The notes below the pieces were generated by a model. It saw nothing but the letters and a program-made list of their open reading frames with translations. It searched no databases and had not been told where the DNA came from. From Perna viridis (lineage: Eukaryota), in contig CM074519.1 in assembly GCA_037379345.1 (NCBI GenBank), forward strand, positions 35,552,103 through 35,616,102: a stretch of DNA of 64,000 nt, read 5' to 3'. The translations under genes and the position numbers were made by a program. This document shows positions 17,844 through 63,444 of this stretch, one piece after another; within the stretch, counting starts at the first letter, position 1, and each line of letters starts with the position of its first letter.

Positions 17844-20800
17844 ATGAAATCCTTTATAGTCTTTGTGCTATTTTCCCTCAACATAACACTATCTCTTGCT
17901 CAAGCCCCATGGGGAGATCAAGAGGCCGCTGATTACGGTGGAGCGACTGTGACTCCGACGGCTGACCCAAACACGTCAACGCCGGGGAGCACGTCAGCAA
18001 TGGATTTACAGACAAAACCAACGTATCGAGGACAGGGTCAATTTCAAAACGAAGCCACTGACTATTCGCAGACTGATGGTGTACTTACTACTGTAGAACA
18101 ATCTTATACCTCACAAACAGTGCAGAATGATCTCTTGGCGAAAACTGATTTGAAAAAAGATTTATCGTCAGTCACTTCAGTAGAACCTTTACATCGAGTG
18201 CAAAGTAGCACATGGAGTGAAATTAAAACTACAACAGCGACACCTGTAATTAGTGAATTATCATCGGCACAACCTGTCGAATATCCATATACAGAACAGA
18301 GCAGTACTAGGACTGAAGCATCTAATATTACAGATATATATAAAGAACACAGCATTGTTCAAACAAAACCAGTAAATAGTATGTCTACCGAACCTACACT
18401 CACATTAAAAGAACAAACACACTACAAAACCACTAAATCTACACAGCAGGAGTATAAACAGCAAAACAACAAACATACACAACCCTACGACCGATATTAT
18501 ACAAATCAAGGTTATACACAGCCAGGAAATCTACAAAAGGAGACAAACTTTGTATCTATGCACTCTTCACATGGCGTGATGAGTACGACTCAATCTGCAG
18601 ACACGACCGCTAGTCACTCTTACAGAGAACAAGAACAAAAACGACAAAACGACACAACTCAGAAAACATCGGTTTATCCAGAGTACCGTGCTTATAGTAA
18701 TAGCCAAGCAAAGCCTCAAAGAGACCTGACAACCTATCAAGGCCGTACTACCACTACTACTTTACCAACTATAATGACAGAGAATCACGAACAAAGGGTG
18801 TATACGACAAAACCAACAGAAACAGTTTATAGTCATCATAGTTCTTACAGTACTCGAGCTGAAACCGAACAAACTGAACCTACTTATGTTAAGGATACAT
18901 TAACGGGCAACCATGTCAATCAACAACAGAACTTGCCAACAAATCCGGCTTATGGAGATTATACCGAGCAAGGGGAAATAGGAACGTGGCCAAACGAACA
19001 ATCATATGTAGTAGAAAATAACTACAACCAAGATGAGTTCTCCATGGTTACACCAACGGCCGACCCAAATACATCGACACCTGGCAGCACGTCATATGTG
19101 TATGCACAAACAGAGCCTACATTACGAGGTAGTGATGCTGTTGTTAACATAAAACCAATCGATAAAACTTCCGATAATCCGGTTTACACATATGACCTTG
19201 ACACAACCAATACTCACCAAATGAGTAATGTGGAAGTAAAAAGCCTCGATGGGCAATTCGATAAATCTGCTAACCAAACGGAGTTTAAATCTAGAACTTC
19301 AAAGTATGGAACAGAAAAACAAGTTGAGGATAAAAGCCGATTTACATCAACGGTGGATACGAAAGGATCAATACGCCATGTTGAAAATGTAACGCTACAA
19401 AACGTTAATGGAATGGAAAATAATATTGTAAAAAGTGTTAAAATAAAAGACATTGAAGTGATTAAACAAGACAATGACGTGCGATATCAACAATTGAATC
19501 AACCGTTAACTGAAAAGCAGAAAGTAATTTCAGGTATTTCTTATATAGGGGAACACCAGTCTGGATATGAACAAGCAAAATCCTTGGAGTTATACCCAGA
19601 TCAACGGAAACCCGAAAAATCGATTCAGAAACCCACCAATCAAGCAGATGTCGTATCTAATAGAAATCAACAAAGATCAAATGTAGGACAAACAATTCTT
19701 TCCGACCAGTTTTTAAATGCAAATAAAAGTCAATACGAACAACAAAACCAAGAAACAAACGTTAGTAAATATACAGAAAAGCAGCAAAATACAACAGACA
19801 GTCTGTACACTGCATACGGAGCAGCCAACGGCTCGTACACAGAGCAGGTCTCTCAAGGTTCTTATGCAGTTCAACAAAAACTGACTACTGTAAATTCATA
19901 TACAGAACAGCAACAAACAACAATTAGACCATATACTATTCAGCAAAAAGACGTAGGTTCGTTAATAGATCATAAACAACATGTAAAGATAAATTCAAAC
20001 GCAGCATACGATCAGCAAGAAGCTGAACACTCATACACAGAACAACACCAACAAACAGCAGGAGTTACAGATCAACAAAAAGCTGCAACAGATTATATCA
20101 ATAAACAGCAACGAACAGGTTTGGATTCTTTCACAGAACAACAAGCTGCTTTAAAATCATATACTGACCAACAGGAAAAGGCGGCTGTTGGTTCCTATTC
20201 AGAACAACGAGGAGCTAGTGGAACTTATACAAAAGAGCAACGAGGAGCCACTGGGAGTTATACAGAACAATACACCGCCGATGGATCTTATACAGAACAG
20301 CAAGCAGTCGTTGGTTCTGTAATCGGTAAAGAACAACCGACTGCTGGTTTGTCTACAGAAAAACAACCGCTTGCTGGTTTGTCTACAGAAAAACAACCGC
20401 TAATTGGTCCGTATACAGAAAAACAACCGCTAATTGGTCCGTATACAGAACAAACACATCAAACAAATGGAACGCAACATACAGAATACCAAAAGCAAGT
20501 AACAATCAGCCCCAGTATGGATTATCAACAGGCAGCAGCAGCGTATTATTCAGAACAGTATTATCCTTATGGAGGTCAATACACAGATCAACAACACAAT
20601 GCAGCAGTTGATCCGTATTCAATACATCAAGGTCAATATGCTGACAATTACCAAAATACAGGCATGTATCCTTATCCAGATCAATACCAATACGCAGCTG
20701 GCGATGCACAAATGAATCAGCAATACCAGTATCAACCTTACAATGAACAAGCAGCATACTCACAATATCAACAACAATATCCAGGTTCATATCAAGAGCA

Positions 20801-25900: not shown

Positions 25901-28900
25901 GTCAAAACAGCGCAGAAAATATAAACAATAAATAAATTAAATAAAAAACAATTACAATACAAGTAAAATGGAGGAGACAGCAACTTCAAGAAGTCTTAAA
26001 CTTTTTTTGGGGAAGACGCGCCAAGTTCAAAATGAAAACCATCAGATATATAAATAAAATGTACGGAATATAAATGTGTTGCTATTATGAATATCCATTA
26101 TCAGTATTATGTTTGTCAGACATAGAATGTTTCTCAGTAAGGTCTGGAAATCCGAAATAAAACTGTTTGGGGGAATGTATGAGTCGTATGTTTACAATTT
26201 TGGTCCAACAGCCTGTCATGAACAGTGATGAAAACTGCTTAAACCATAAAGACACAGAATCAATGTAATTTTCAGTAATATTAAAATTTTGAAATGGCAC
26301 CCTTTTCTATCATTTGAGAGTGTAAGTACACCTAAAACGAATATTTTAAACTTACGATGTCAATAGTAACATTTTTTTTCAATAATGTTTTTTTTCTACA
26401 GCTTGTAAATTCCTACCTGATGAGTACAATCCATATGGATATCTGACTTTAGAGCACAATGGACTCCGGATCCGAGCTTGTCCAAGTGGCACCGTATTTA
26501 GTGCCCAACAGTGTGGGTGTCGACCGATCAGAATGAAATTTAGTACGTCACGTCGACAAATGAAACGTAAGTATACTTAGAAATATTAGATACACATGTC
26601 GTTGAAATATTACAATTCATTACGATACATATGCTTACAATATTTAAATATAACTATCAGTATATTGGACCGTACGACCCTTGAAATGCTGGTACTTAGG
26701 TAAGCTTGCTGGTACTTAGTTAAGCTTGTATGCATTATAAAAGTAGTTAAACATGACTTTGTTAAACTAATATCGGATATTACATTTCTAATACTTTAAT
26801 ATTTATGAGTGTGTTAATTGAATTTGACGATACATTTGTGCATTAACGATACATCTGAAATGTATGTAATATAGTATTTTAAGGGCTGTTATTAGTTTTT
26901 TTTTGGATTTGTTTTTATCTTGGGTGATTGATTAAAAAAATAAGGAAAAAGTTATGATTGTGTATATATAATGGAAATGTTATAAATGTTATAGTGATGT
27001 ATCAAAATATCCAAACTGCAAAACGCCTAATCAATTAATTAAAAGAACAATTCACAACAACGTTATGAATGAGTAAACCTATATTCTTTTTTTCAGGATG
27101 CTCCCCAGAATTTTCTATAGATTTCAATACAGGCTTTAAAGAGCTGTCGGGATCGAATATGGCATTTGATGTTAGTAAGGTGGTAATTCACGAAGGAGCA
27201 GCTCATTTCGATGGCAACGGCAAAATAACATTATGGGGCTATATGAATCGGGATCTTGGAAAGAAGTTTGTGATTAGATTACGTTTCAAGTCTGATTTAA
27301 TGCCTTCTGAAAATGGTAGCCTTATATCAAACTGTGGTTTGACAGGGGAACCCACTGTTTCGATTGATATAGAAAACGGGAAACTGGTATCGTCAGTAAA
27401 GAGTAAAAGTTTCAGTCAAGTTACAAAAATAAGTGACGACATTGTTGTAAGTAGATAATATTGTTTTTCTAATTAAGTTGCTCTGTTTTGCCACGTGATT
27501 GACCCTTAGAATATGTATGTCAATCAAATGGTTATCAAATATTGTACTAAGAAAAATGTTAATAGATTAGTCTCATGAAAACAAAATACCTTACACGAGA
27601 CATAATATGTTAATCTGTATAAGCTCTAAGTGTATCATTTAAACAAATAGCATTGCATCAGTAATATAATGATATCGAGTGCACTTAGGGTTTGGTAAGT
27701 TACCCTTTGAATGTTATTGTTATGACATGGAAAATACAAAAACTACAAATAAAACGAATAAAATCATTTCATGACGTCGTTATATTATCTGAAAAAATTA
27801 ATATGACTTTAAACTTCTTTAATGTGTTCTCATAACACGAATACAACACAATTGTTATGTCATTGAAATAAACACTCTTGAATAGACACAATATATTAAT
27901 TAAACTCCGTAGCAAGTATAATATTCAACAGTTAGTTGCATATATATCAGCAAAAACAAACCAGAGCGTCAGCAGTATGTTTATGAAATTAACCAATTAT
28001 TTTTTCAGCCGGATAAATGGAATGAAGTAACCTATATCTATGATGGTTCAGCATTTATTGTCAAGACAAATCGAGGTTACAATAGGACACCAATTACAGG
28101 TATATATATTACAATTTTTATTTTAGTTTTATATACAATTTAATTTTCACAAAGGTTTCTCGTGTGTTTTTCTTTCACAATTTTACTATTTACCAGTATT
28201 TTATTTGTCATGCGTTGAATCTTTTGAAACTCGATGCATGTTTTGGTATAAACAATGTGTAACAATTTATTGTATGGAAGTAAATTGCTTTGTCAGTATT
28301 ATTTAATAAATATAATTGAACATTAAATATAAATATTGCTTTCTGTTGTTTCTAATTTTTGTTATCATAAGATTTTCTGTAATTTTCTTGCGTGGTTCAA
28401 TACTGTTGAAAAATGTTGAAGAAACATAATTTAATTTAAGGTTTTGACATGCATAAATGCTATTCTTTATTGTGATTAAAAATTTAGGAGAAATGTCCAT
28501 CAGACAAACACCGCACAAGCAGTCATTTACAAATACGATAAGAGGACGTCGTTTAGCATTCAACATATAGTACAGTAGGACTCCCAATGAATGCCCTGCA
28601 ATAATAAAAAAAACTAGATGTATTTGTTGTCCAATACAAACAAAGGTCAACACAAAAAACTAGCAAGAGGTTAGCAGAAAAGGGAAAATGCATTCATGGA
28701 GCAAGTTCCTGACTTTGGAAATTCAGAAGTGTATGAAAATAGAAATAGAGTACATGTTTTATGATATCTCTGCTTGTGAAGTCCAGTTATAAACCATATA
28801 CAGCCAGTGTTTATAAGAGATTCAAACACCAAAACTAGATAACAAAAATACCAATATCTATAGTATTTGTTCATGCTTGCACCGGGCGCTTATTTTTTGT

Positions 28901-30136
28901 AGGTTTGTTAGAGTCTAGATCGAATGCTTTAGTGATTGGGGGCTGCCCGAAACCGGGTAGGGACTTTAAAGGTCTTATAGATAAGGTATGTTTATATCAG
29001 CAGTTTCACAAAAAATAGGAAATATTATTTTGATTTTTTATTATATAACTTACAACTAATTTTGTACTTCCGAATTTAATTGATTAGAAAATCATAAAAA
29101 ACATATAATCGTTGACGGTAATATGGTTACACAGCATGCTTAATACACTTTTAAGGGAAAGACCACCTTTGCATTAAGACAGGCTCTTAGGATAAATCAT
29201 ATCCACGTAAACAACAATAAATAACCTTTAATGCAAAGTAGGCTTTTATAAAATGCTCAAGGCTAAGCAAGTTTGCAATCTTTCAAATATATGTGGATAG
29301 CCAGCTTGCAGAACTCTCCTATCTGAAGGAAGTTTATAAGCAGACTTTATTGATTTTTACCGATAGCTGCCGATCGGCTCGTGACGTCAATAAGTCGGTT
29401 TGGTATTGACACAAGTACTGCAAATAATATGTAAACAAAAAATATTCCGTAAATATCTCTTCGATCATGTTTTTTTATCACCAAAACATGTTGTCTTGTC
29501 AAGTTTACACGATTGCACGATTGATAAAAGAGAAATATTCTAAAAGTTTTTTGACCGGCAACACGAACATTCTTCGGAAATAGCCATTAGATTTTCCTCA
29601 GACATACTAGTCTTCTGGCTGAAAACCCCGTTGTTCGTCAGTGTTGTCCGGCATTTGCTTACAAGTTGTGCCTCAATCTTTTCTTCTGTTTATTTTGGGT
29701 TGAAATTATAGAAGAAAAGTAACAAATTTGCGATTTCGTCAGACATCGTAATCACTTGCCTATTTACTTTCACTTTACAAACAAACTTCGTGACGTCATA
29801 TCTCAACCTATCATGGTGACGCCCATGGTCGCGGGAAATTCAAATTCCCTAATTATAAATCGCTATAAGTTAAGAAAAGAAATTTAATTGTTTCAATTTA
29901 ATTTTCATGAACATTAAACAGATTAGACACGATATTTATGACTTGCACAATAAAATAGTCTTCTCTTTTAAAAATCTTTTTCCGGAGTACAATATATGTT
30001 GAAGACATACTTTATATTAATTTTATTACAGGTGGATATTTTTAGTGGTTGTATTCCATTCGGTGTACACAAAAAACCTAAACGGACGATAGTGAATAAT
30101 CAAGTTACAAAACATCCAACAGCATCCAACTTTTAA
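17844..30136 (+). CDS. Pif/BMSP-family-like secreted protein A (2101 aa): signal peptide + Q/T/Y-rich disordered region + 3 chitin-binding-like domains + LamG/ConA-like domain; no VWA
   Basis: join(17844-22962,23301-23492,25133-25333,26402-26566,27097-27446,28009-28099,28903-28985,30032-30136) = 6306 nt; all GT-AG; open to TAA; exon sizes and phases match paralogues B and C. Confidence 0.88.
23301..23492 (+). CDS. Gene A exon: chitin-binding domain 1
   Basis: SLCIHSSYIDSIGYASYPGRCDKLVQCY..RDCPYGYFWHQDQVLCRSPSQVPCYE; six Cys; 192 nt; absent from the ORF track. Confidence 0.9.
25133..25333 (+). CDS. Gene A exon: chitin-binding domain 2
   Basis: DPCLNID..GGCRSYYSCEYGVSVPMCCEIGSRYDGTMCVQDHTCYEPC; 201 nt. 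Confidence 0.9.
26402..26566 (+). CDS. Gene A exon: degenerate chitin-binding-like domain 3 + basic linker
   Basis: SCKFLPDEYNPYGYLTLEHNGLRIRACPSGTVFSAQQCGCRPIRMKFSTSRRQMK; 165 nt. Confidence 0.88.
27097..27446 (+). CDS. Gene A exon: LamG/ConA-like part 1
   Basis: CSPEFSIDFNTGFKELSGSN..AHFDGNGKITLW..LISNCG; 350 nt. Confidence 0.88.
28009..28099 (+). CDS. Gene A exon: LamG part 2
   Basis: PDKWNEVTYIYDGSAFIVKTN; 91 nt as in paralogues. Confidence 0.85.
28903..28985 (+). CDS. Gene A exon: LamG part 3
   Basis: GLLESRSNALVIGGCPKPGRDFKGLIDK; 83 nt. Confidence 0.85.
30032..30136 (+). CDS. Gene A last coding exon
   Basis: VDIFSGCIPFGVHKKPKRTIVNNQVTKHPTASNF*; candidate AATAAA 30496-30501. Confidence 0.82.
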   Translation: MDIFSGCIPFGVHKKPKRTIVNNQVTKHPTASNF

Positions 30137-31319: not shown

Positions 31320-32490
31320 GCAATCAAGGAGACCAAAGTTTAAGCGGAAATCAATAGATAATTCTTCAAAGAAAAAGACCAGACAGGGACAATAAACTCA
31401 TAAAATAGAACCAGGGTTATAGCGGTAATCGAAAAAATGTAATCCAGGGACAAAGACCAGACATGGAAATCAGACATACACAACAAAGAACACAAAGTAA
31501 CTAAAATCATACATACAAAGTAACAAAAGCAAATGAGCAACTCGGACTCCACGTAAAACTGGGAGCATGGACCAAGTGCACCGGTAAGGTAAGCGTCCTC
31601 TGCTTTTCTAGAAACACCCGCCGAGTTGCTCACAGAAAGGCAAGTCCGGGGTAGACAAACGAGGAAAGGAAAACTATGACAGATGAATAAATCAGTTTTC
31701 ATGGTACAGATAAACGATCCACGAGTTCATGATGATGACATCAACATAACCCTGTTCCAGAAGCCTATTTGTTAGAGTTCTAGCGCGATACAACAAGTCT
31801 CTGTAGTTTCGGCAAGCTCTGGCATAACGTACATACACAGGTGCTGAAGGGATATTGCCACAGATGAAAGGAAAGTTGACAATACTGAATGAAAAGTCAT
31901 TACGTTTGGTCAATAATTTTCCTTTACCATCGATTTCTAAGTGTAGGTCAAGATATGAGGCTGACTTCACAGTGTCTTTAGTATCCTTTATCTCGAGTTC
32001 TTTGGGGTAGATGCGATGTATCAAATTCACGAAATTGGGATTATTTAAAGATAATACGTCATTTATATAGCGGAAACTGAGATTAAAGGATCTAGCTAAA
32101 CGATGTTCTTTCTTATGGATCAGATCAGCTATAAAATCAGCCTCATAAGAGTGAAGGAATAGGTCAACAAATAACGGAGCACAATTTGTTCCCATTTGAA
32201 TGCTGACCGTCTGTTGAAAAACACGTCCACCACACTGGACAAATATGTTGTCGATTAAAAATTCCAGCATTTTGTAAACATCTTCCTCTGTATATTTGGA
32301 AGATGATTTGGAATTATTTCTTACAAAGTATGAGGAATCTCTTCCAAGAACTATATATTTGTATCTAGGTGTACCATCTTTTTGGAAAAACAACGATGCA
32401 AAATGTTTTTAAGTCGGGATTTTAACTGAGTAGGGGAAAAGAAGTATACAGTGTTGAAAAATCATAGGTTTTAATGCTATCATATTCAGA
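31320..32490 (-). mobile_element. Penelope-like element, longest fragment (degenerate RT)
   Basis: YDFSTLYT, FQQTVSIQMGTNCAP, RYINDVL (YxDD decayed), SASYLDL; frameshifts; partial second copy of the 3' tail at ~31320-31390. Confidence 0.85.
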
Positions 32491-33580: not shown

Positions 33581-33581
<1 letters not shown>

Positions 33582-52984: not shown

Positions 52985-53023
52985 CTACGTTATACCATGT
53001 GGAACACAAAGATATAACTTAAC
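52985..53023 (-). CDS. Gene C last coding exon
   Basis: VKLYLCVPHGIT*; acceptor TTTCTATATTTCAG. Confidence 0.8.
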   Translation of the reverse strand, partial: VKLYLCVPHGIT

Positions 53024-56000
53024 CTGAAATATAGAAAAGAAACATTCATACTCCAAATGGTCTTATAACAACAAAAGTCACCATATGTTAATGCATTGTT
53101 TTTAATATTACATAAGATATCGTGATAATGTAATGACGTTCCATATAACAATGTGCTCTGCTTTTTTAAAAGCTTGCTTTGCTGCAAACCTCATTTACTT
53201 ACATTGAATTTTGGTTTGATCTGTATATAAGGCACTCTATTCGTATATTCAACGTTTCTTTTCACACGAAATGCTGCTTTTCTTATTATAAATATCTTTT
53301 TATGTGATATAAGTTTACCAAATAACAAAAAAATCCTAAATGATTATTTGAAATGTAACATATCTTATGAAAGCAGAACAAAATATCATCAAGGGCCATT
53401 GATCCAATTAAAATATATAACTTTGTTGTCACTAAAATGACTTTGTAAATTAATGTATACATACGTCATCCATCATTCCTATATACCCTCCAAAATAATC
53501 ACATGCCCCTAATATCAACGCACTCGGTCGTTCTTCTATCGTACCTGTATAATCAGTGTGTTATTTAAGTAGCTATTCATGGCGGGTATAGTGTTGTTCT
53601 TATTCAAACATGGGTGTGGTCTTTGTATTCAATTGTTTTGTATCTGACATTAGCGAGGTATGAAATATGAATATAAAATTTGACCCGTTTGTATATGAGC
53701 ACAATATCTAACATGATTTTTTCTTTTCTAAAATCACAAAAAATATACAGTTTGACGTGTGTATGATGTCATATCAAAATAGTCCATTTGCTTCTTAAGA
53801 TAAATCTAGAGTATCAATCTTTGATTATTTATTTTATTTTAGATAACGTGGGATTTGAAAAAAAATATTACAAAAATATATACTCGTAGACGTATCTAAG
53901 TGTTCGTTCATATGCGAAGTTCTATTTTCGAAACTTCGGAGGTCGTTCCAATATGATAATATTAATTGAGATGTTTCAAGTCGAGATGAATGAAGACACG
54001 ATACTAGCAACATTTCATGAATTTCAAGACGCACATTACTCGTTATTTCATAATTCCTAGTTGTCATATGCATATGTGTGTGTTTACAACTCTTCACATT
54101 TTTAGGTACAATGGTTGCGAACATGACCACATAGAAGTCTGGTAAGGGCATAAAAAAAATTGACACTCTATTCGTAATACAAATTCATCTTCCTTTTGCT
54201 ATCACGGAAGAGTTACATCTACTTGGTTAACATTCAAGCACGTTGTTTTGTTTGATCTTGTTCTGTGATTTGTTTTTATCTAGAATTTTGAGTTGAAATA
54301 ACTATGATTTATTTCAATACGGACGTGCACTTAGTTTGCAATTAGTTTTTTATCCAATAAATTGTATGCATTTTTTTTTAATTATTCAATTTTACCTGTA
54401 AGTGGAACAGTTGTTTTCTTTCCATCTATATTACCGATTAGATGTCTGCCATCATAGACAAAACTTAATGTTTTCCATGATGTACTCTAAAAGGATAGTT
54501 ACAAAAATATATTCAAATACATTTACAAAGTCTATTTAGGAAAAAAAGACTATTGTTATAGGAAATAAACAAGTTGAAATAGATCACAACTAATTCCCAT
54601 TCCAATGATTGATTAATTTATTTTAGTTTTATGTCCTACTGAAGATATTTCATGAATATTAGGACGAGAATGTTTAACTAATCGCTGTTTTGTAATAGTC
54701 AAACAAGCTAAGGGTGATTTTATTATGTTAGCTCAAAAAAGGCCTCAGCTCGCAGGTAAGCATATCATTTCAATAGAGCACATTCTTCCATAACCAAGCC
54801 TCCCTGTCGCTTCTCTTGAAGCAGTGAATACCTTTTATGTATTTGGTGCGACTCATCTGAAGATCAAGGCGAGCAAGAGACCGCCGTGTCTTCAATCATA
54901 GTACGCAGTATGCTATGGTTGAAATTTCGAGGCTTCTATAGAGAAAATAAGGTTAGTATCGTAAAGTTTCTATATCCAATATTCCTGTGTGTTCCATCAT
55001 TTATAGAGAAAAATATATTAATATGATTTAATTACGAATTTAGCTGAACACATATAGTAGGGTATAATAAAAACATAAAATTATTACAAGAGTAATCAAG
55101 ACTCTCGCGGATTTAAAAAGAATGTAATCCAGGGACAAAAATCAGACATGGAAATCAGGCAAATACATCAAAGAAAATTAAGTAGTTCAAATAATACATA
55201 CAAAGTAATAAAAGTAAATGAGCGACTCTGACGCCACTAAAAACTGGGAGCATGGACAATGTGCACCGGTAGGGTAAACGTCCTCTGCTTTTCTAGAAAC
55301 ACCCTTCGACTTGCTCATAAAAAGTAAAATCCTAGGTAGACGAAAGAGAAAAGGAAAACTATGACACGTTGAACAAATCAGTTTTCATGGTGCAGATGGA
55401 AACACCAAAAACGATCCATGAGTTCATGTTCTGTAGTAATGACGTCAATCTTGTAGCAATATAACCCTGTTCCAGAAGCCTAATTGTAAATAGTCTAGCG
55501 TGATACAAAATTTTTGCGCAGTTACGGCAAGCTCTGGCATAACGTTTGAGTTGTTATATGAAAACTCCTTATGCAGGTGCTGAAGGGATGTTGCCATACA
55601 TGAAAGGAAAGTTCACAATAATGAATGAAAAGTCATCACGTTTGTTGTAAAGTTTGGTCAACAGTTTTCCCTTACCATAACGTATACTGTATGACATTAT
55701 TCCAGAACGCTAACATCGTACAAATTACTTACATTATATTTCATGACTGACATTTGCTCTCCTCCTTTATCGGTTGTAGCTAAAAACATGGCGCCCTTAT
55801 TTGGTGATATTGCAATGTCTATTGACGGACGCATAACTTCTGGATTAAAACAGTTTGACAATAAATGCATAGGTTCAGCTGATTGAACGTGGGGATTTTC
55901 CTTATACTTCATTGTTACTGCAAACTGTGACCCGTATGATACACCAGAAAATCGCCACAATCTAATCTTCCCGCTTCCGTCGAATCGCGCAGCTCCATTT

Positions 56001-59000
56001 TCTATGTGAACATTTTCTGGTGTAACTGCTAAATTGTTTCCAGATTTGTCACTAAATCCATCATTAAAGTCAAGTATTAGTTCTGGTCTGCAGGCTGTTT
56101 AATGGACATGAAACAAATACTTCATTGAAATGCAAATTGCAGAAATAGATATAACATTCGAAACAAGTTCCTAGTTGTTTTCGCATAGACCCCCTTTTCA
56201 CCAAAAAGGTACAAAAACAGAAGTTGTTGTTCTCTTATACTTCTGAAATTTCTAATATCATATTTGTGATAGAGTATTCAATGAAAAAAAGACGGGAAGC
56301 CTAAAAAAATCAAATAAATTTCCAACGTTTCTAAGTACTGATGAAATACCACAAAACAATTACAATAGCATTCTACTCACAATTTTTTCGCACTTCTTCA
56401 CTCCTGTCGCATGTACAGAGACCCGGATTATACTGTGACCCACGTGGACAGGATCGTGTCATCATTCCAAGACCTGGGATCTCCTCAAAGTAAAACCGTT
56501 CGTTTGTTTCAAATGGAGTCATTCTACAACTAGCTAGAATAAAAATCGTATTCGAAACATTTAAACTTAAGGTTTAATAACACGATTTCAATCTTTTCAA
56601 ATGTTCATAACTGTATAAGTTATGAAAAGGTACCTATATCACGCAACAACTTCGATAAAACACTAAGGAACAGAATCTAGAACCTATCGAACAATGTCGT
56701 ATTTTGTTAAAATAGAATTCTCAGGTTTCGAGAAGTCATACTAACAGGGTGACCTTTATGTTTTGAAGACAAAATAAATAGTAAAGTATATTCGTAGGGG
56801 CAACAATGAAATCGTTGGATATTAAATATGAAATACTTTATGACTTGTTTAATAACATGCTCGGGTGTAAAGAAGTATCATAATCAATTACTGGTGAGAA
56901 AAAGATATATGTACTTTATGATAAAAAATATATCGAATGCCAGTACTGTACTAATATTCGTATTAAAACTCATTACGTAGATTAAATACATTCCAAAGTG
57001 CTAACATCATTGAACAATTTCTCGATATGAAGTCTTGTCACGAACAAGATCCCGTTGTAACACCCAAACCACTTCATACAGGAATTGTAAATATCTAAAT
57101 TGACACTGGTCAAGTCAGTATTCGCTAAAACAATAACAAAGAGTGTGTGGTAAGTGACTAATGTCATTTGGGCGACTTTGACGTACTTTAACTAAAACAT
57201 AAATGTACTTATTAACTTTATGGGTAATAGAAATATGAAATGATTTCATTGACTGCCTTTTCATAGATTAAAAGTTCATTCACATATGGTCTGTGTAACA
57301 ATTGTTTTTTTTTTTTTTTTTTTTTTTTTTTTGGGGGGGGGGGTTTAAGTGCTATAAGGACACAGGTATTTTAATAAAGTGACAAAAAATGTTTATTCCT
57401 TAAAATGTTAGTGTATAAAATAGTCATTAAAAAGTTGTTATGCCATCCTATATATGTACATAAGACACTACAATGATTAATAATAACGCGAACAAGATCC
57501 ACAAATGAAAGCGTAGATATCTTCTTGTCTCTAGTCGAAATTTACAGGTAAGCAAACCTTTAAACATCATAATGACATAAACCACAATTAATTATGACCC
57601 TCGGTTGATCACATTTTTCATCATAAAAAATATGACCCATCATGGAACAAAAGTTTGCTTTTTGTCATTTAAAGGTGACCCACCATTCAAAATGGCTCAC
57701 ATTGACCACAAAAGAATATTATTTAATTTTGCAAAGGCATGGGATTCAAAAATATACAAAAAGAGAAAAACAAGGTTCCAGTGAACTTTTACTTTGAGTG
57801 TGTAAAAAAGAGATAAACATTATTTGTTTATAGATATAACCAATCTAGAATTTAAAGAATGCATTTGTTTGGCTTCAGACACACATGTCTCGCGTCATGA
57901 CACATCATTTTTTGTGTGGGATGATAATCCACCACATCACATTTATAGGTAAATAAGCAGCATATGAAAAAAGAGCCTATTGAAACACTGGCGTCATCCA
58001 TGAACAGTTTGGTATTAACATTGGGATAAATGATACAGAAACATAACTATATCTGGCGATACTTATTTCTGCACTGTATCGAGTTTGTTCTTTAGTTTTT
58101 TGTAAACAAAACTGTCAAAATTTACAAACAAAATTGTATAATATGCTTTTGTATAATTTAAACGTTTTATGTACTTACTTTAATCTGAAAATTATGGCGT
58201 CATGCAAAGTGTCGCCTTTTGACGTTATAAACCAATATGGTTTAAGTCTTTGCCTATGAGGGACAGCGCTATTTGTCTTCAAATAACATATGACTTGATA
58301 ATACACCGCTTTGTTATATCGCTGGTGCATGTACTAATGGTAATGTACGAGACGTTCTATATTACGCGCTGTGTATCTGTGTTAAAAGTTCGAACAATCA
58401 CTTCCTTACTGCTTACGTCATTTCTGACAGAACTATTGTGAGCTATTCATGTTTCTGAACATCTACATATACTAGGACGTAGATAATGCTTAATTCATAT
58501 CAACTTTTAAATACATTTTTGTTTTATCAAATTACCAAAGGGTGATGTAAATGTCAGCTCTCCAGAATCTTCACACCAGTCATGACAACCAGGGTCTGGC
58601 ACACATTCCTGTTTTTCTTCATTGAATGCAAATCCGTCGGGACAACACTTGGCTTGCGACAGACCATTACGACAAGACCAGTGCGCACGACAGTTCCCCT
58701 TATGATCATATGATCGAACCGTGAAATCGAAGCAGGGATCTAAAAATAATCAAATATCCATCGTATGAACTCGTAAGACTAGAACACAATTTACAATATT
58801 TTGTAACTCTGCGTTAGTTTATTGAAATCGTATTTTCATCAATGTAGATACAAAACTGGTCTCTCTCTTTGTATTTACTTACTAGTAGAAGTATTAGCGA
58901 CAACTCCAGATATTACACATATCACCTGTGTACGTACAATTGTTTCGGCATTAACTGGGTACTCCAAAATGTGACCTAATTATGAGGGTCGACTTCTAGC

Positions 59001-62000
59001 AATAAGTTTCATTATGAAATTTACTAGTTACTTGTCGACAGAATTTTAAATGGCTTAATTTCATAATAATTTGCAAGTTTGTTATTTGTATATTGTGTGT
59101 TTAATTATATCCATTGAATAAACTTACCTCTCCAACAAGACATAGATCCAGATGGCCTACACAGTAGAAGTCTCTGGTCCCAAAACATTCTAAATGGGCA
59201 CCTGGCCCTCTCAACCTTAATCTGTCCACCCTCGTAGAAACACTGTATAAATTCATTACAGCTTTTTGGGTCTGCGTTGTATCCTACACCATCCACGTAC
59301 TGACTGCCATAGCATAGATCTGTTATTAAAAAAAGAAAACAAAATGAATCAAACAATCTAAAATGCAAGTTAGCGTCATACCTATTAGTTATCGGGTAAA
59401 AAGGGAGAGAATAAGTACAAAGGAAGAAAAGAATAACTGAAGCTTTTCAGTCGTTTCAAGTAGCTGTCTTTCTAAGAATCATGCAAAATCTGAAAAATGT
59501 GATACACCCTAAAAAAAGGCTACATATTTTTATTTTTGTAATTAATTTGTTTTATGGGTCTATACTATGACATGTGTAATTATTCATTCAAATTTGCCTG
59601 CTCTTAGGAGATAATCAACATTAAAAATCCAGTAGATTCCACTGTATTTGAGCGTCATTTACAGAGTTATCTCCCTTAATTTTGAAATTTACAGTGCATT
59701 CTATACAATTTTTATCTCCAAAGAGCACCGGTTATATGAAAAACCACATGTTAATTTCTGTTTACTATGACATTTCAAACAAAATATTAAAAATAAAAAT
59801 ATGTAGGCTTTTCACCCATGAATCACATTTTGCATGATCCTTAGCTGGAGTTCTACTTAATATTTAAGAAATAGATAGAAGGCAACGTATAGAGGATATA
59901 CAGTAGTGGCGGTATATGATGGTAGTTAAAATGTTCAAAGGAACTAAAGAATGAATAAAGATGTTTTCCATTGAAGGAAGATGAAATGATCCTAAATAAA
60001 CGGATGTACAACCATGTCGGTAACCAGTACCAGATCAAAAGTACTGTTGAAAGAGATTGGTTATGACAAACTATTCTTATTTTTTTTCTAATTATATAAT
60101 ATTCCATACACCTATGAAATGCTATGAAAGTTTATTGCATGTTTGATAACCTTTAAATGTTATATTTTAATGTCACAAACATAAGGTAGTATTTTAGATC
60201 TTCAAATGATATGCTTAAATTTATAAGACAGGAAACTTTTTTTCTGACAGGTTTACAGGATATCCGACATATGTCTAAAACAGGCTTCTTTAAAGCTTTA
60301 GTAATATTGAGGTATAGTGTGACATTTACATTTTTAGGAGCCACATCCCATTTGATACTTTCCGCAGTTAAAACTACATTAGAAAGACACTTTCTGAAAA
60401 CAGATCTTGGTTAACTAACACCCCCAAGGTGTTGTTACTTAAATTAATTTTAATGACAATTTTTTTTGGAAGAAAAATGGAGAATGTGCATAAAGTTCAT
60501 ATTTCATTTCACTTCAAGAGAAAAATATAACACCAACAAAGATTCTTGAGTAATGATGATGTTGTTGATCTGAATATAAAATACACGTATGATCTTGTGA
60601 GCGTCAATTTTCTCATAGCTCTGCTGTAAGACAAGCCAGCAATGTCTTATTTATATTACATGGAGATCACTCTCGAACATTAAACGGTTTAATTGATATC
60701 AAATGCTGATACAACATATACTTATATTCTTTAATAAGTTATTTGTTACTTTAACATTAAATTACATAATTAATAAGTTAAACAATGGGATATATTTTAC
60801 AGACCCGATGTTTGGAAAGTAATCTCTGTCATGTACTCTTCAGAACTTTAACCAAAATCAAAATGTTGTCATTGGAATAAAATCTTAGTTTTGACAAAAA
60901 AAAGCTCTGGCCACAAAACCAACAAAGTATCTTAACAAAATAGTAATCTTTTTTTGATAATGTAACTTTAAATAAATTGCATATATTTTATGGCGTCATT
61001 ATCTGAAAATAAACTTCGTCTCGATATTTGTTTTCGTTTTGTGGCACTATAGTATAGATATATTCCAAACAGCCATGGTGACTGTAAGATCACGTGACTT
61101 ACCAGCATGATGTCCGCCAGCATGGTTTGATCTATCTGCAAGGTATTCTTATTAAACCCCTCTTTACACTCTTTTATTTTAATACATTCTTTTTGATAAT
61201 AGGAATAAGTTGAAAATATTTAAACCGTGAATATCAAATCCCCACTTGCCAGACAGTCTAAACATTCAAGCTGATCAAACAATACATTTTCTTTCTATCA
61301 TTGAAAAAATAGAAGATTTCATGAGAATATTTTATAATCTTGTTTTTCAGTCATTTGCTTGTAACTTCTCGATATACCTTTTTCTCATTTTATTCTCGGA
61401 TACATTGCAAAAATGTTTTGAAATTTACTAAGCCTTATATTATTATTTAAGAATACAGATGTCTTATTTGTTGACAAAGAAAGGGGTAGAACTGAAATAA
61501 AACTAAACTTACGCTCTTCTTCAATTCTGTCTTTTCCTTGGGCGGGTCCAACAGCAAATGGTTGTGGTTCAGATACGACAGGTGCCCGAGGAGTCGTTGT
61601 AGTTGTTGTCGTTGTAGTTGTCGACGTAGTTGTAAGAAATCTTGGTATTGGCCGTCTTGGATAAACTGGTTGTGTCCTTCTGTTATCTACTGGTCCATTA
61701 ATACTAAATAAGGTTACAGGTGATATTAGAGGATTTCGATACTCACTTGCCCATGCACTTGTCGTCGTTTGTGTCTCAGTCTGAGGTTTTGTGTAAACCT
61801 GGTAAGATGGTGTTGACGGTGCGTAAGTTTTCCAAGCTGCTGGTGTCGATTTCTGGACAGGTATGTTAACCCATGGAGCTTTGATTGGATCTGATTGTTT
61901 ATACCACTTCTGTTCGTTGAAAGATGGTTGTTGATATGTCGGGTCTTGTACTTCGTAATTTGGATTGGTATTCTGGGTCCACCATGGATCGCCACCAACA

Positions 62001-63444
62001 AACTTTTCAATTTTTGTTCCAACAATATCTTTTCCATTAAGCAAATTTGCTTCAACAGATATTTTTAAAAGTTTGTTTGTATCTCTGTCTTCTTCCCTAT
62101 GTCTGTATAGTCTATTATCAACACTGACTCTTGTTGGATTCTGTCTTTGCGGCCCATTATTACTGTCAATGGTTCTATCTGTCTGCCATTGTCTTGACGA
62201 ATCTTGATTATTGTCAATTGTGTCTTGTGTTTGCCAACCTGCAGACGGTTCTTTTTTGCCATTTTCTGCTTGCAATAAACTTGAAGAAGGCGATTTCATG
62301 TCGGTTGCTTCCCTTGTGGGCCATTGTCTAGAGGGGGTCAATTCATCGTTGACCCTGTCTGCAGTAGGCCCTCGCCTCTTTGGTTGTATATGTGGTTGTG
62401 TTGGTTTGCGTGTAGTTGTCGTAGTTTTCATTGTTGTTGATTTAGTTGTTGTTATAGTTGTTGCTATAGTTGTTTTTGTTGGCAATGCATTGAATTTAGG
62501 ACTAATTTCAGAAGCAGGCATACCAACATGATCGGCACTGGCTGGTATTTTAGCTGTAGATGCTATTATAAGACAAAATGTGATTTATAAACACTTACAA
62601 GTAGAGAAGATCGATATTTTAACAAGCGGATTTATTTTGCATCAGTTAATCGGGATACAACACATGCACATTTTTCAGTTATTTTTTTCTAATAAGGTAT
62701 AGGAAATCATTACTAGCTAATAGATTTTTGTTATATTAAATAAAAAATGCTTGCAGTGTTCATCCATTTTTAAACCATATTAAGATTTCAAGAAAAAGCG
62801 GCACAAAATCATATATTTGGATAGCAATGTATATTGTTTCATTATATCAAATAATACAGTGTAATTCATGATATTTTTTTTTAATTTTTCACCTGAAGTT
62901 GTTAGTTTCCTTACTGACTGTACAAGCTTATCCACAGCAAGGTCGATTGGCTCAATATAAAAATACTCATTTGGTTTGAAAGCCATCGATCTCAGCTGTT
63001 TCTCATCAACGAGTCTCCCAACTCCAACGCAGAATAGGTGTATTCCAACTGACCTCAGTGCCTCACTTTCGCCCCTACTAGCATCAGGATATTTGGATCG
63101 TCCATCAGTTACAATGACACCAATCTGCGCCGTTTTTTGGCGTCCACTTGAATAAAACATCCGTTCTAATTTGTTGATTCCCAAGTCTATTCTACTACCA
63201 TCCTGTGGCTGTTGTAACGTATGTAAGGTTTTAATTAAACTATTTTTGTTTGTGGATTGTGCTAAATCAACTGTATCACCTATGTCCGAACTAACAACAA
63301 TGACACCCACACGAACCCTCTCCGGGCCAATGTCTACCTGTGTGATGAAGCGTTCGACAAGAGTTTTTTGTTCTACGAATTCCCCGTCTGAGATGCTATC
63401 AGAACCATCCAACAAAAATACTATGTCTGCCTGGTCAATATAAT
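52985..63444 (-). CDS. Pif: Pif/BMSP-like protein C (5'-incomplete, ~918 aa visible): VWA + Thr/Pro linker + His micro-exon + 3 chitin-binding-like domains + LamG
   Basis: Minus-strand exons 63444-62893, 62562-61513, 61135-61103, 59319-59128, 58739-58536, 56533-56381, 56094-55733, 54486-54396, 53544-53465, 53023-52985; all GT-AG; in frame to TAG. VWA-ChtBD-LamG is the Pif/BMSP architecture; symbol denotes family, orthology not established. Confidence 0.85.
53465..53544 (-). CDS. Gene C exon: LamG part 3
   Basis: GTIEERPSALILGACDYFGGYIGMMDD; 80 nt. Confidence 0.85.
54396..54486 (-). CDS. Gene C exon: LamG part 2
   Basis: STSWKTLSFVYDGRHLIGNIDG; 91 nt. Confidence 0.85.
55088..55678 (-). mobile_element. 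Penelope-like 3' fragment in gene C intron
   Basis: GKGKLLTKLYNKRDDFSF..NIPSAPA..RYARACRN plus the shared tail. Confidence 0.8.
55733..56094 (-). CDS. Gene C exon: LamG part 1
   Basis: SCRPELILDFNDGFSDKSGNN..ARFDGSGKIRLWRFS..LLSNCF; 362 nt. Confidence 0.88.
56381..56533 (-). CDS. Gene C exon: chitin-binding-like domain 3
   Basis: ASCRMTPFETNERFYFEEIPGLGMMTRSCPRGSQYNPGLCTCDRSEEVRKN; 153 nt. Confidence 0.85.
58536..58739 (-). CDS. Gene C exon: chitin-binding domain 2
   Basis: DPCFDFTVRSYDHKGNCRAHWSCRNGLSQAKCCPDGFAFNEEKQECVPDPGCHDWC; 204 nt. Confidence 0.9.
59128..59319 (-). CDS. Gene C exon: chitin-binding domain 1
   Basis: DLCYGSQYVDGVGYNADPKSCNEFIQCF..RCPFRMFWDQRLLLC..SCWR; 192 nt. Confidence 0.9.
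61103..61135 (-). CDS. Gene C 33-nt micro-exon (HRSNHAGGHHA)
   Basis: CCTTGCAG|33 nt|GTAAGT, phase 1-1. Confidence 0.65.
61513..62562 (-). CDS. Gene C exon: Thr/Pro/Gln-rich mucin-like linker (350 codons)
   Basis: Poly-Thr tracts at both ends; ends GAG C|GTAAGT; an alternative in-frame acceptor is possible at 62553. Confidence 0.85.
62893..63444 (-). CDS. Gene C exon: von Willebrand factor A domain
   Basis: ADIVFLLDGSDSI (MIDAS DxSxS)..VRVGVI..IVTDGRS..LFCVGVG; 552 nt, phase 1-1. Confidence 0.93.

What the first reader, a model, noticed from the sequence alone, without database searches (positions are those of the whole stretch)
17844..63444. Modular Pif/BMSP-like cluster: one conserved ChtBD x3-LamG chassis carrying three different N-terminal payloads
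Seen: three neighbouring genes share exon sizes and phases (192; 201/201/204; 165/174/153; 350/350/362; 91; 83/83/80; terminal). Gene C has VWA + Thr/Pro linker. A and B have no VWA and instead a single 5119- or 5581-nt exon of unrelated low-complexity sequence (Q/T/Y-rich vs acidic V/Q/T/D repeats) with matching borders (AG|ACA.CA..GACATG start; L-E-T|GTAAGT end). All junctions upstream of LamG are phase 1, so modules are interchangeable. Established: Pif and BMSP combine VWA, chitin-binding and LamG-like parts in shell formation. Inference: a system for anchoring different giant disordered polymers to the chitin scaffold, possibly layer-specific. I do not recognise >2000-aa VWA-less members as characterised.
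Basis: partly seen in the sequence, partly recalled or inferred. Interest (0 to 1): 0.85.

Follow-up and report, generated by a model that had tools for sequence, protein, structure and literature searches.

The report
Mussel chitin-anchored shell-matrix gene cluster
Three neighbouring mussel genes share one chitin-binding tail: one carries a VWA domain, two carry giant disordered chains encoded by single 5-kb exons. The cluster is real, but this kind of shell-protein cluster is largely described already.

Summary
Genes A and B lie on the + strand and gene C on the - strand. All three share an exon chassis (192; 201/201/204; 165/174/153; 350/350/362; 91; 83/83/80; short terminal exon) with canonical splice sites and the stated phases. 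RNA contigs from three studies and stranded raw RNA-seq confirm all seven junctions of gene B, including giant exon to chassis.

The genome is almost certainly Perna viridis. The published shell proteome of that species holds a spliced fragment of B ('mucin-2-like', ChtBD2+LamG) and fragments of C ('sushi-like protein', PifN-type), both found in nacre.

VWA-less CB+LG proteins are a published class ('LamG3'), described inside a 'Pif_LamG3_cluster' that arose by reverse tandem duplication. Predicted VWA-less homologues of 1,500-2,400 aa exist in at least seven other bivalves.

A and B are sister tandem duplicates. Their payloads most likely diverged in place rather than being swapped in.

New here:
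- the full-length models (2,101, 2,243 and 927 aa);
- the single-exon payload rule;
- A's rewritten payload;
- a 12-locus family census of this genome.

Gene A's splicing and expression remain untested.

The parts
17828..22962 (+). Gene A giant exon. 16 nt of leader follow an acceptor-like CAG. ATG at 17844, then signal peptide and a 1,685-aa Q/T/Y-rich disordered payload. Phase-1 GTAAGT donor.
   Evidence: The ORF is intact in a second individual's genomic contig, with one in-frame 10-aa indel.
23301..23492 (+). Gene A exon 2 (192 nt), CBM_14 module 1
   Evidence: CBM_14 26.9 bits, above cut-off
25133..25333 (+). Gene A exon 3 (201 nt), CBM_14-like module 2
   Evidence: 17 bits, below cut-off
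26402..26566 (+). Gene A exon 4 (165 nt), Cys-rich CBM_14-like module 3
   Evidence: 15.7 bits, below cut-off
27097..27446 (+). Gene A exon 5 (350 nt), first part of the LamG/ConA-like domain
28009..28099 (+). Gene A exon 6 (91 nt), LamG
28903..28985 (+). Gene A exon 7 (83 nt), LamG
30032..30136 (+). Gene A terminal coding exon (105 nt including the stop). Total protein 2,101 aa.
35433..41031 (+). Gene B giant exon. Leader after an acceptor-like CAG, ATG at 35451, signal peptide, then a 1,841-aa acidic V/T/Q/D payload with 13-, 12/72- and 11-aa repeat arrays.
   Evidence: RNA covers 39200-41031 with no internal joint.
41426..41617 (+). Gene B exon 2 (192 nt), CBM_14 module 1
   Evidence: Junction 41031/41426 is seen in RNA.
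41811..42011 (+). Gene B exon 3 (201 nt), CBM_14-like module 2
42355..42528 (+). Gene B exon 4 (174 nt), CBM_14-like module 3
43224..43573 (+). Gene B exon 5 (350 nt), LamG first part
43820..43910 (+). Gene B exon 6 (91 nt), LamG
44518..44600 (+). Gene B exon 7 (83 nt), LamG
44940..44999 (+). Gene B terminal coding part (60 nt including the stop). The 3'UTR runs on beyond 45150. Total protein 2,243 aa.
62893..63444 (-). Gene C VWA exon (552 nt, phase 1-1). The signal-peptide exon lies just outside the window, at window-like positions 64114-64054.
61513..62562 (-). Gene C Thr/Pro-rich linker exon (1050 nt, phase 1-1)
   Evidence: The spliced form is printed in PMC6641155 S3/S4.
59128..59319 (-). 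Gene C CBM_14 module 1 (192 nt)
58536..58739 (-). Gene C CBM_14 module 2 (204 nt)
   Evidence: 29 bits
56381..56533 (-). Gene C Cys-rich module 3 (153 nt)
55733..56094 (-). Gene C LamG first exon (362 nt)
54396..54486 (-). Gene C LamG exon (91 nt)
53465..53544 (-). Gene C LamG exon (80 nt)
52985..53023 (-). Gene C terminal coding exon (39 nt including the stop). Total protein 927 aa.

Best explanation
The window holds a local cluster of three secreted shell-matrix genes of the molluscan Pif/LamG3 lineage, in what is almost certainly the green mussel Perna viridis.

Shared chassis. All three end in the same ~380-aa part, encoded by seven small exons. It has one canonical and two degenerate CBM_14 (peritrophin-A) cysteine modules, followed by an uninterrupted LamG/ConA-like jelly roll.

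Gene C (minus strand, 927 aa). It puts a signal peptide, one VWA domain and a ~350-aa Thr/Pro-rich linker in front of the chassis. It is the orthologue of the Mytilus coruscus nacre protein 'sushi-like protein' (PifN subfamily).

Genes A (2,101 aa) and B (2,243 aa). They are tandem duplicates from an old, entirely VWA-less clade (the published 'LamG3' type). In them one 5.1-5.6 kb exon encodes the signal peptide plus 1,700-1,850 aa of cysteine-free, intrinsically disordered low-complexity chain.

How it most likely works (inferred). The mantle secretes these proteins. The CBM_14 modules fasten the C-terminus to the chitin sheets of the shell matrix. The LamG domain offers a second carbohydrate, protein or Ca2+ contact. 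The N-terminal part projects as the functional head:
- in C, a VWA protein-protein adaptor;
- in B, a long polyanionic chain (net charge about -170, pI 4.2) suited to binding Ca2+ or mineral and filling the space between sheets;
- in A, a Gln/Thr/Tyr-rich chain with clustered Tyr-Thr/Ser-acidic motifs.

Origin of the A/B difference. It arose by duplication and in-place rewriting of the payload exon (repeat expansion and fast divergence). The chassis stayed under purifying selection.
For: Shown:
- Exon sizes, phases and splice sites.
- All seven junctions of B in transcript contigs of three studies and in stranded raw RNA-seq reads, consistent with a + strand transcript under the usual library convention.
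- VWA only in C. CBM_14 in the first ChtBD exon of all three genes.
- The chassis is collinear over ~375-390 aa with 30 database proteins. Several of these reach or approach the Pfam Laminin_G_3 / Laminin_G_2 thresholds.
- AlphaFold models of the C orthologue and of a VWA-less homologue show three small beta modules plus a beta sandwich at high pLDDT. The sandwich matches LamG/LNS, pentraxin, TSPN and other ConA-like jelly rolls at Z 14-19.
- Chassis tree: A+B sisters (97/95); then M. galloprovincialis VDI24116.1 (99/98); an 11-row clade with no VWA member (100/99); C with M. coruscus AKS48157.1 (100/100).
- Chassis A vs B: pN 0.19 against saturated pS 0.75.
- A 16-aa motif occurs twice in payload A and differs at 10 of 48 nt, all synonymous.

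From the literature:
- PMC6641155 S3/S4 prints Unigene51584. By reading, it equals the end of B's giant exon spliced to the whole chassis, with one residue different. It was found in nacre with two peptides that fit B and not A.
- The same tables print Unigene31135 and Unigene31729, which equal C; these were also found in nacre (read).
- PMC10543319 defines LamG3 and the Pif_LamG3 cluster. PMC11291548 defines PifN.

Family rule. A fourth and fifth giant-exon member lie elsewhere in this genome, with the same CAG|ACA...ATG start or the same phase-1 end after Glu.
Against: - Gene A has no RNA or protein evidence here. Reads were laid on B, and a search of the P. viridis shell-proteome supplement for six A-specific strings found nothing.
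- A has the longer chassis branch (0.36 vs 0.10). Its two alleles differ at 25 nonsynonymous and 2 synonymous sites, so constraint on its payload is weak.
- B's shell evidence is only two peptides.
- Chitin binding, the role of LamG and any mineral interaction are inferred from domain families. None was tested.
- Two of the three 'ChtBD' modules fall below Pfam's threshold.
- LamG could not be scored on the window's own spliced products, because joined models were not sent to the search tools.
- The 5'UTR exon implied by the acceptor before each ATG was not observed.
- The species name rests on reading near-identical published sequences, not on a computed comparison.
Confidence: 0.75

Rival explanations
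1. Module swapping. A and B acquired unrelated payload exons by exon shuffling onto a common chassis, made possible by the phase-1 borders.
For: All junctions upstream of LamG are phase 1. With composition correction the payloads show no similarity. gA vs gB scores only z 2.4 above window-shuffled controls, and gA vs the Mytilus payload z 0.3. Across the family, presence of VWA changes at least 4-5 times on the chassis tree.
Against: - A and B are sisters on the chassis tree, and synonymous sites are saturated, so recent gene conversion is unlikely.
- Both giant exons keep the same start (acceptor, ACA..ATG, signal peptide) and the same end (Leu-Glu, phase-1 GTAAGT).
- The last 120 aa still score z 3.3.
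- B's payload keeps residual similarity to the Mytilus orthologue's payload (z 5.8), so one copy simply retained the ancestral payload.
- Neither payload has a second copy or donor anywhere in the 723-Mb genome.
Confidence: 0.1
2. Gene A is not an adult-shell matrix gene. It is either silent and decaying, or used in another chitinous or secreted structure (periostracum, larval shell, gill rods, gut, byssus).
For: - A search for six A-specific strings found nothing in the nacre/myostracum proteome tables.
- A has a longer chassis branch.
- The allele comparison gives 25 nonsynonymous to 2 synonymous differences.
- The Tyr-rich payload differs from the acidic or silk-like payloads of the paralogues detected in shell.
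Against: - An intact 2,101-codon frame runs over eight exons with canonical sites.
- The ORF is intact in a second individual, and its only indel is in frame.
- Chassis pN is far below pS.
- The repeated 16-aa motif is conserved through 10 synonymous changes.

Decay is therefore unlikely. A non-nacre site of use remains quite possible.
Confidence: 0.25
3. B and C are general chitin-associated mucus or extracellular-matrix proteins (peritrophin/mucin-like), and their presence in shell extracts is incidental.
For: B was identified with only two peptides and named 'mucin-2-like'. Its mantle transcript level in that paper's table is low. CBM_14 plus a mucin-like chain is the architecture of insect peritrophic-matrix mucins (my own knowledge).
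Against: C's orthologues are nacre proteins in four bivalves (PMC11291548). The paralogue with a silk-like payload (Unigene2367, 'matrix protein-1') is among the most abundant P. viridis shell proteins, with 25 peptides. LamG3 and Pif genes are mantle-enriched and layer-specific in oysters.
Confidence: 0.1

Closest known systems
LamG3 proteins and the bivalve 'Pif_LamG3_cluster' (Crassostrea nippona study, BMC Biol 2023, PMC10543319)
   Same: Both have CB (CBM_14) plus an LG domain and no VWA. Both sit in a chromosomal cluster with VWA-bearing Pif paralogues that arose by reverse or tandem duplication. Both include low-complexity regions, and in both the proteins are shell-matrix components. 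A/B (+) facing C (-) fits that picture.
   Different: The text found there does not describe payloads of 1,700-1,850 aa encoded by one exon, the phase-1 exon design, or mytilid members. On my chassis tree the VWA-less clade that holds A and B includes unionids as well as pteriomorphs, so it looks old; the oyster LamG3 highlighted in that paper is a recent, Ostreidae-specific VWA loss.
PifN subfamily / Mytilus coruscus 'sushi-like protein' AKS48157.1
   Same: Gene C has the same order: signal peptide, one VWA, a long Thr-rich insert, the CB modules and a complete LG. Its chassis is 89% identical and joins AKS48157.1 at 100/100 on the tree. It is found in nacre.
   Different: C is 927 aa against 844 aa; the linker is longer and only ~49% identical where it aligns at all. 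It is an orthologue, not a new type.
'Matrix protein-1' (M. coruscus AKS48137.1) / P. viridis Unigene2367
   Same: It has the same CBM_14 x3 + Laminin_G_3 chassis and no VWA. Its giant N-terminal low-complexity payload starts with CAG|ACA..ATG and a signal peptide, and its last payload exon ends in phase 1 after Leu-Glu.
   Different: Its payload is Gly/Ser/Ala-rich (silk-like) and split over two giant exons (open frames of 1,614 + 745 aa). It lies on another chromosome (contig 10, near 12.5 Mb). It belongs to the sister sub-clade and is abundant in both nacre and myostracum.
Pif (Pinctada fucata Pif97/Pif80) and BMSP (Mytilus)
   Same: Both combine chitin-binding and LG parts, are secreted, and serve in the shell matrix. 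Both carry low-complexity regions thought to contact mineral.
   Different: Pif and BMSP are defined by one or four VWA domains, and their low-complexity insert usually splits the LG domain. In A and B there is no VWA, the LG is uninterrupted and the low-complexity region is N-terminal. A true 4xVWA BMSP gene lies elsewhere in this genome, on contig 13 near 2.26 Mb.
Insect peritrophic-matrix mucins (CBM_14 domains plus mucin-like stretches); comparison from my own knowledge
   Same: They work alike: peritrophin-A modules tether a long, probably glycosylated, disordered chain to chitin fibrils.
   Different: They have no LamG domain, a different arrangement of CBM_14 copies and no shown common descent. 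This is an analogy of mechanism only.

Membership tests
LamG3 (CB + LG, no VWA; PMC10543319), genes A and B | At least one chitin-binding peritrophin-A (CBM_14) domain | tested here: met
   Exon 2 of A and of B score 26.9 and 25.3 bits against CBM_14 (cut-off 22.1). Exons 3 and 4 score 15-17 bits, below the cut-off.
LamG3 (CB + LG, no VWA; PMC10543319), genes A and B | C-terminal concanavalin-A-like / laminin-G domain | tested here: inconclusive
   Exon 5 alone gives no Pfam hit, and joined exons were not searched. Indirect support is strong. The chassis is collinear with proteins that score Laminin_G_3 up to 31.4 bits and Laminin_G_2 at 23.5 bits. The AF2 model of homologue P0017 matches LamG/LNS/pentraxin folds at Z 14-19. 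SMART LamG is reported for Unigene51584, which equals B.
LamG3 (CB + LG, no VWA; PMC10543319), genes A and B | No VWA domain | tested here: met
   tblastn with the VWA domain at E<=10 hits only 63442-62876, which is gene C. Both giant exons start with ATG and a signal-peptide-like sequence. Upstream UTR exons were not observed, so an upstream coding exon is unlikely but not excluded.
Pif/BMSP family in the strict sense (VWA-defined; PMC11291548), genes A and B | VWA domain of the Pif/BMSP clade | tested here: not met
   A and B are relatives of the family through the chassis, but they are not members as that paper defines it.
PifN subfamily, gene C | One VWA domain of the Pif/BMSP type | tested here: met
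   Pfam VWA 5.9e-32. The domain is 78% identical to the VWA of M. coruscus AKS48157.1.
PifN subfamily, gene C | [quoted passage not shown] | tested here: met
   A 1050-nt exon encodes a Thr/Pro-rich linker. The matching stretch in the AF2 model of the orthologue has pLDDT below 50.
PifN subfamily, gene C | CB modules followed by a complete (uninterrupted) LG domain | tested here: met
   CBM_14 scores of 26.4 and 29 bits. The orthologue model shows three small beta modules and one beta sandwich over residues 660-836. The chassis is 372 aa with no insert.
PifN subfamily, gene C | Protein present in the nacreous layer | not testable with these tools
   Literature only. Unigene31135 and Unigene31729, which by reading equal C, are listed as nacre proteins of P. 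viridis. Orthologues occur in the nacre of four bivalves.
Gel-forming mucins (the name databases give to homologues: 'mucin-2-like', 'mucin-3A-like') | VWD/C8/TIL assemblies and a cystine-knot C-terminus flanking the Pro/Thr/Ser domains | tested here: not met
   Pfam finds only CBM_14 and Laminin_G in the homologues, and nothing in the payloads. The payloads contain no cysteine.

The most novel reading that the evidence does not exclude
The CBM_14 x3 + LamG anchor joined to one giant, cysteine-free payload exon forms an ancient VWA-less clade that spans bivalve orders, older than the split between pteriomorphs and unionids. In this clade the payload is free to be rewritten: Gly-rich and silk-like in unionids; Gly/Ser/Ala-rich in this genome's 'matrix protein-1' gene; Ser/Thr/Pro mucin-like in scallops; acidic Val/Thr/Asp repeats in mussels; and, in gene A, a complete rewrite to a Gln/Thr/Tyr chain within Mytilidae. 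If so, part of the 'silk gel' and 'acidic polymer' phases of the nacre model would be covalently tethered to chitin by the same anchor, and payload turnover on a fixed anchor would be a general route to new shell microstructures.
Probability: 0.4. Interest if true: 0.6.

Novelty: new member of a known kind. Interest (0 to 1): 0.4.

Why it matters
For shell biology, the report gives complete, RNA-checked (B) or orthologue-checked (C) gene models for proteins so far known in this species only as short transcript fragments. About 85% of the B protein, a 1,841-aa polyanionic chain, was missing from the published fragment.

It also shows that the anchor-plus-giant-exon design recurs at four or more loci in one genome and in several bivalve orders. 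That makes a concrete hypothesis testable: different disordered polymers are tethered to chitin by one conserved anchor. The tests are chitin pull-downs with the chassis, mineralisation assays with payload fragments, and layer-resolved proteomics re-searched with the full-length sequences.

The A/B pair is a clean natural example of a disordered region being rewritten after duplication while the folded anchor stays constrained.

None of this overturns current views. It extends the published LamG3/Pif cluster picture to mussels.

Tried and rejected
1. Protein database search with giant exon A found only a 98%-identical product of an unspliced genomic Logan contig from another individual. It gave no annotated protein and no transcript.
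2. I searched with the last 450 aa of A's giant exon to catch products of spliced RNA contigs and found nothing. The same search for B, which is certainly expressed, was also blank. That database therefore does not hold such products, and the blank for A says nothing.
3. Exon-by-exon Pfam for LamG gave no hit. The only match was a spurious Ribosomal_L35Ae at E 0.011, which I rejected.
4. Foldseek on the full model of the C orthologue was dominated by VWA hits. I therefore folded and searched a VWA-less homologue. Among the top matches are the lectin-like jelly-roll subdomains of clostridial neurotoxin binding domains. I read this only as membership of the ConA-like fold class, alongside LamG/LNS, pentraxin, TSPN and CBM40 matches. 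It does not suggest a toxin relationship.
5. Synteny in Mytilus could not be tested: the contigs encoding VDI24116.1 and XP_063413153.1 are not on record.
6. A paper search by the accession numbers of the giant homologues found nothing.
7. An Rfam scan of the whole window found nothing.
8. I looked for a donor or second copy of either payload in the window's own genome. There is none for A, and only stop-ridden low-complexity matches for B.
Those comparisons were made by reading side by side.
10. Exons were searched one by one by reference. Joined translations were used only inside local scripts, for lengths, alignments, pN/pS and the tree.

Full report
**1. What is in the sequence**

Two very long open frames stand out on the + strand: 17793-22997 and 35400-41048. 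Both are A-rich and slightly richer in GC than their surroundings. Translated, each starts at an ATG (17844; 35451) with a short hydrophobic, signal-peptide-like N-terminus. Each then runs for 1,700-1,860 codons of low-complexity sequence. The first is rich in Q, T, S, N, P, K and Y. The second is rich in V, T, Q, D and E.

An all-against-all comparison of stop-to-stop segments shows small conserved pieces downstream of each giant frame. It shows a third copy of the same pieces on the minus strand between about 59300 and 53400.

Every one was recovered, with good polypyrimidine/AG acceptors and mostly GTAAGT-type donors. The giant exons measure 5119 and 5581 nt from ATG to donor. Both are preceded by CAG|ACA, and both end with Leu-Glu plus one base before GTAAGT.

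They lie at 30032-30136 (A), 44940-44999 (B) and 53023-52985 (C).

Gene C has two further phase-1/phase-1 exons upstream of the chassis: VWA at 63444-62893 and a Thr/Pro-rich linker at 62562-61513. A good signal-peptide exon with a phase-1 donor lies about 50 nt beyond the window's end, at window-like positions 64114-64054.

The resulting proteins are 2,101 aa (A), 2,243 aa (B) and 927 aa (C).

**2. Is it expressed and spliced as modelled?**

Four runs were laid on 39200-45150. In three of them, from two studies, single transcript contigs join the last 460-630 nt of B's giant exon to the chassis exons. In two runs the same contig continues through the terminal exon into the 3'UTR; in the third, a second contig covers the later junctions. 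A stranded raw-read RNA-seq run from a third study shows the same seven GT..AG joints with 3-11 reads each, all in one orientation; under the usual stranded-library convention this means a + strand transcript.

The giant exon is covered without any internal joint from 39200 to 41031. The best runs, guessed from their size to be RNA, hold 0.58-0.63 of the sampled words of 35433-45000, a stretch whose exonic fraction is 0.71. This suggests that most of the giant exon is transcribed.

Gene B's model is therefore shown. Gene C's joins are supported by the orthologue and by published spliced unigenes (section 3). Gene A's joins remain inference, resting on:
- identical architecture;
- canonical splice sites;
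- an intact frame;
- an ORF kept open in a second individual, whose only indel is 30 nt long;
- chassis pN 0.19 against saturated pS 0.75 versus B;
- a 16-aa motif that occurs twice in A's payload and differs at 10 of 48 nucleotides, all synonymous.

**3. Identity**

Exon-wise Pfam gives CBM_14 above threshold for the first ChtBD exon of all three genes and for the second in C. The other ChtBD exons give sub-threshold hits, except C's third, which gives none. VWA in C scores 5.9e-32. The first LamG exon alone gives nothing.

A full HMMER scan with A's 116-aa LamG exon found 65 relatives. Many are long proteins that carry the match about 200 aa before their C-terminus. Their Pfam content is CBM_14 plus, in several, Laminin_G_3 or Laminin_G_2 at or near threshold. 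VWA is present in some and absent in many. The chassis is collinear, at 370-390 aa, in thirty of them.

Two AlphaFold models were made. One is the orthologue of C (M. coruscus, 844 aa); the other is a VWA-less scallop homologue. Both show three small beta modules and a confident beta sandwich. The sandwich aligns to laminin LG, neurexin LNS, agrin, perlecan, pentraxin, TSPN and other ConA-like jelly rolls at Z 14-19.

The source names identify C's orthologue as the M. coruscus 'sushi-like protein' AKS48157.1. Shimizu et al. 2024 place the M. coruscus nacre protein of this type in the PifN subfamily, which has a long Thr-rich insert between VWA and CB and a complete LG.

The supplement of the Perna viridis shell proteome (PMC6641155) prints three relevant unigenes. 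By reading, Unigene51584 is the end of B's giant exon spliced to the entire chassis, with a single residue different. The genome is therefore almost certainly P. viridis.

**4. The wider family**

VWA-less homologues of 1,500-2,400 aa are predicted in:
- Mytilus galloprovincialis (2,330 aa);
- M. trossulus (1,589/1,606 aa);
- Sinanodonta woodiana (2,344 aa);
- Potamilus streckersoni (1,656/2,067 aa);
- Pecten maximus (2,205 aa);
- Mizuhopecten yessoensis (2,313-2,386 aa, named 'Shell matrix protein');
- Ylistrum balloti (2,161 aa);
- Tegillarca granosa (1,525 aa).

Their payloads differ widely. Unionids have 29-35% Gly, scallops are Ser/Thr/Pro-rich, M. trossulus is Ser/Lys-rich, and Tegillarca is Gln/Thr/Pro-rich.

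In the window's own genome the LamG exon has 12 matches. Looking 30 kb around each gives the following:
- the 'matrix protein-1' gene, with two giant exons (open frames of 1,614 and 745 aa, Gly/Ser/Ala-rich), a signal peptide after CAG|ACA..ATG, and a phase-1 donor after Leu-Glu;
- another open frame of 1,930 aa directly upstream of a CB1 exon on the same chromosome, about 9 Mb away;
- a 4xVWA BMSP gene;
- a VWA gene with a 700-aa Lys/Ser/Thr exon;
- several members with 350-630-aa low-complexity exons.

The matrix protein-1 gene's product (Unigene2367) is one of the most abundant P. viridis shell proteins, with peptides from both payload and chassis.

**5. How A, B and C are related**

I built a maximum-likelihood tree of the chassis with 24 rows. 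I left out P0005 and P0042 as truncated, and the isoforms P0067-P0070. Rows lacking most of the CB part were excluded by the coverage filter. The tree shows:
- A and B are sisters (97/95).
- The M. galloprovincialis protein is the next row out (99/98), followed by a Potamilus protein (98/96).
- This group joins the matrix-protein-1 / unionid / scallop group in an 11-row clade with no VWA member (100/99).
- C sits with its M. coruscus orthologue (100/100) in the neighbouring clade.
- The VWA label needs at least four to five changes on the tree. The tree cannot say whether these were gains or losses.

On the payloads:
- B's payload still aligns to the Mytilus payload better than window-shuffled controls do (z 5.8).
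- A's payload aligns to neither (z 2.4 and 0.3), except weakly over its last 120 aa against B (z 3.3).
- Neither payload has another copy in the genome.

My reading is that A and B arose by tandem duplication in the Perna lineage after its split from Mytilus. B kept the ancestral acidic payload. A's payload exon was rewritten in place. Phase-1 symmetry is real and may have helped the older gain or loss of VWA, but it is not needed to explain the A/B difference.

**6. Mechanism**

Shown: three secreted multi-domain proteins with a common C-terminal chassis; B is spliced as modelled; B and C are reported from nacre.

Inferred from the families: the CBM_14 modules bind chitin, and LamG supplies a second carbohydrate, protein or Ca2+ contact. 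VWA in C mediates protein-protein contacts. Shimizu et al. showed this for the VWA of Pinctada Pif97, which pulled down five nacre proteins.

The payloads are cysteine-free and strongly hydrophilic, which marks them as disordered. B's mature payload has pI 4.2 and net charge about -170, spread evenly. It contains a 28.7-copy 13-aa array, a 12-aa array with a 72-aa higher-order unit, and an 11-aa array. That fits a chitin-tethered polyanion that binds Ca2+ or mineral, or forms the interlamellar gel.

A's payload has pI 5.6 and 98 Tyr, including 14 Tyr-Thr/Ser-acidic-Gln/Lys motifs between residues 149 and 913. It also has a short 10-aa array that is length-polymorphic between individuals. Oxidative Tyr cross-linking is a possibility, but only a guess.

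**7. Comparison with what is known, and novelty**

The BMC Biology 2023 oyster paper (PMC10543319) defines LamG3 proteins as CB+LG without VWA. It finds them across lophotrochozoans. It describes a bivalve Pif_LamG3 cluster built by reverse tandem duplications, with repeated VWA loss, low-complexity domains and layer-specific shell proteins. The window is the mussel counterpart of such a cluster.

C is an orthologue of a known nacre protein. B's C-terminal quarter is already published as a nacre 'mucin-like' protein with a chitin-binding domain. 'Matrix protein-1' is a known abundant VWA-less member.

The text searches did not turn up any description of:
- the full-length giant forms;
- the rule that the payload, signal peptide included, sits in one or two giant exons joined in phase 1 to the chassis;
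- the old all-VWA-less clade;
- the payload rewrite in A.

I therefore class the finding as a new member of a known kind.

**8. Limits**

- Gene A's transcription is untested.
- The species name and the peptide matches rest on reading, not on a computation.
- Mytilus synteny could not be fetched.

Noticed in passing
window 583-5580: An LTR-bounded element. Near-identical direct repeats lie at about 631-948 and 5320-5596. An internal ORF (3746-4234) weakly matches the baculovirus F / errantivirus-type envelope protein (E 2.2e-5, just under the Pfam cut-off). I only observed it.
   Followed up: partly
window 15470-16042, 31409-32000, 42595-43053, 55094-55676: Four copies of one interspersed repeat, in mixed orientations: upstream of A, downstream of A, in B's intron 4 and in C's intron after the 362-nt exon. 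RNA contig depth over the copy in B's intron reaches about 17,000 against 10-20 on the exons, and many loose ends lead into other loci. The repeat family is therefore abundantly transcribed elsewhere. A second repeat at 44175-44373 behaves the same way.
   Followed up: partly
window 17949-17996 and 19047-19094: A 16-aa Thr/Pro/Ser-rich motif occurs twice in A's payload, 366 residues apart. The protein sequence is identical, but 10 of 48 nucleotides differ. This is evidence of selection on the peptide within an otherwise fast-evolving disordered region.
   Followed up: yes
window 20332-20456, compared with L001: The 30-nt (10-aa) repeat array in A is length-polymorphic. An independent individual's contig lacks one unit (10 aa) at residue 847. 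The two alleles differ at 25 nonsynonymous and 2 synonymous sites.
   Followed up: yes
window 17839-17847: In A's leader a three-codon upstream reading frame (ATG, one codon, TGA) overlaps the main start codon at 17844. B's leader has none.
   Followed up: no
G000 contig 10, about 12,544,800-12,556,300, minus strand (L002, L004, L005): The gene for the abundant shell protein 'matrix protein-1' (Unigene2367 of PMC6641155). It has two giant exons (open frames of 1,614 aa with Gly 31%, Ser 17%, Ala 13%, and 745 aa rich in Ser/Gly/Lys), followed by the same CB x3 + LG exon set.
   Followed up: partly
G000 contig 9, about 44,680,600-44,688,700, minus strand (L015-L017): A fourth giant VWA-less family member. 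A 1,930-aa open frame (Pro/Ser/Thr/Asn/Lys-rich) ends at a phase-1 GTGAGT donor about 240 nt upstream of a CB1 exon. Its start codon and signal peptide were not located.
   Followed up: partly
G000 contig 13, about 2,252,000-2,276,300, minus strand (L018-L020): A BMSP-type gene. It has four VWA matches, then CB1-3, then an LG exon that continues as an 876-aa open frame. This is the LG-insert arrangement described for BMSP.
   Followed up: no
window 37114-40467: Gene B's three repeat arrays: 39 nt x 28.7; 36 nt with 72- and 216-nt higher orders; 33 nt x 3.4.
   Followed up: yes
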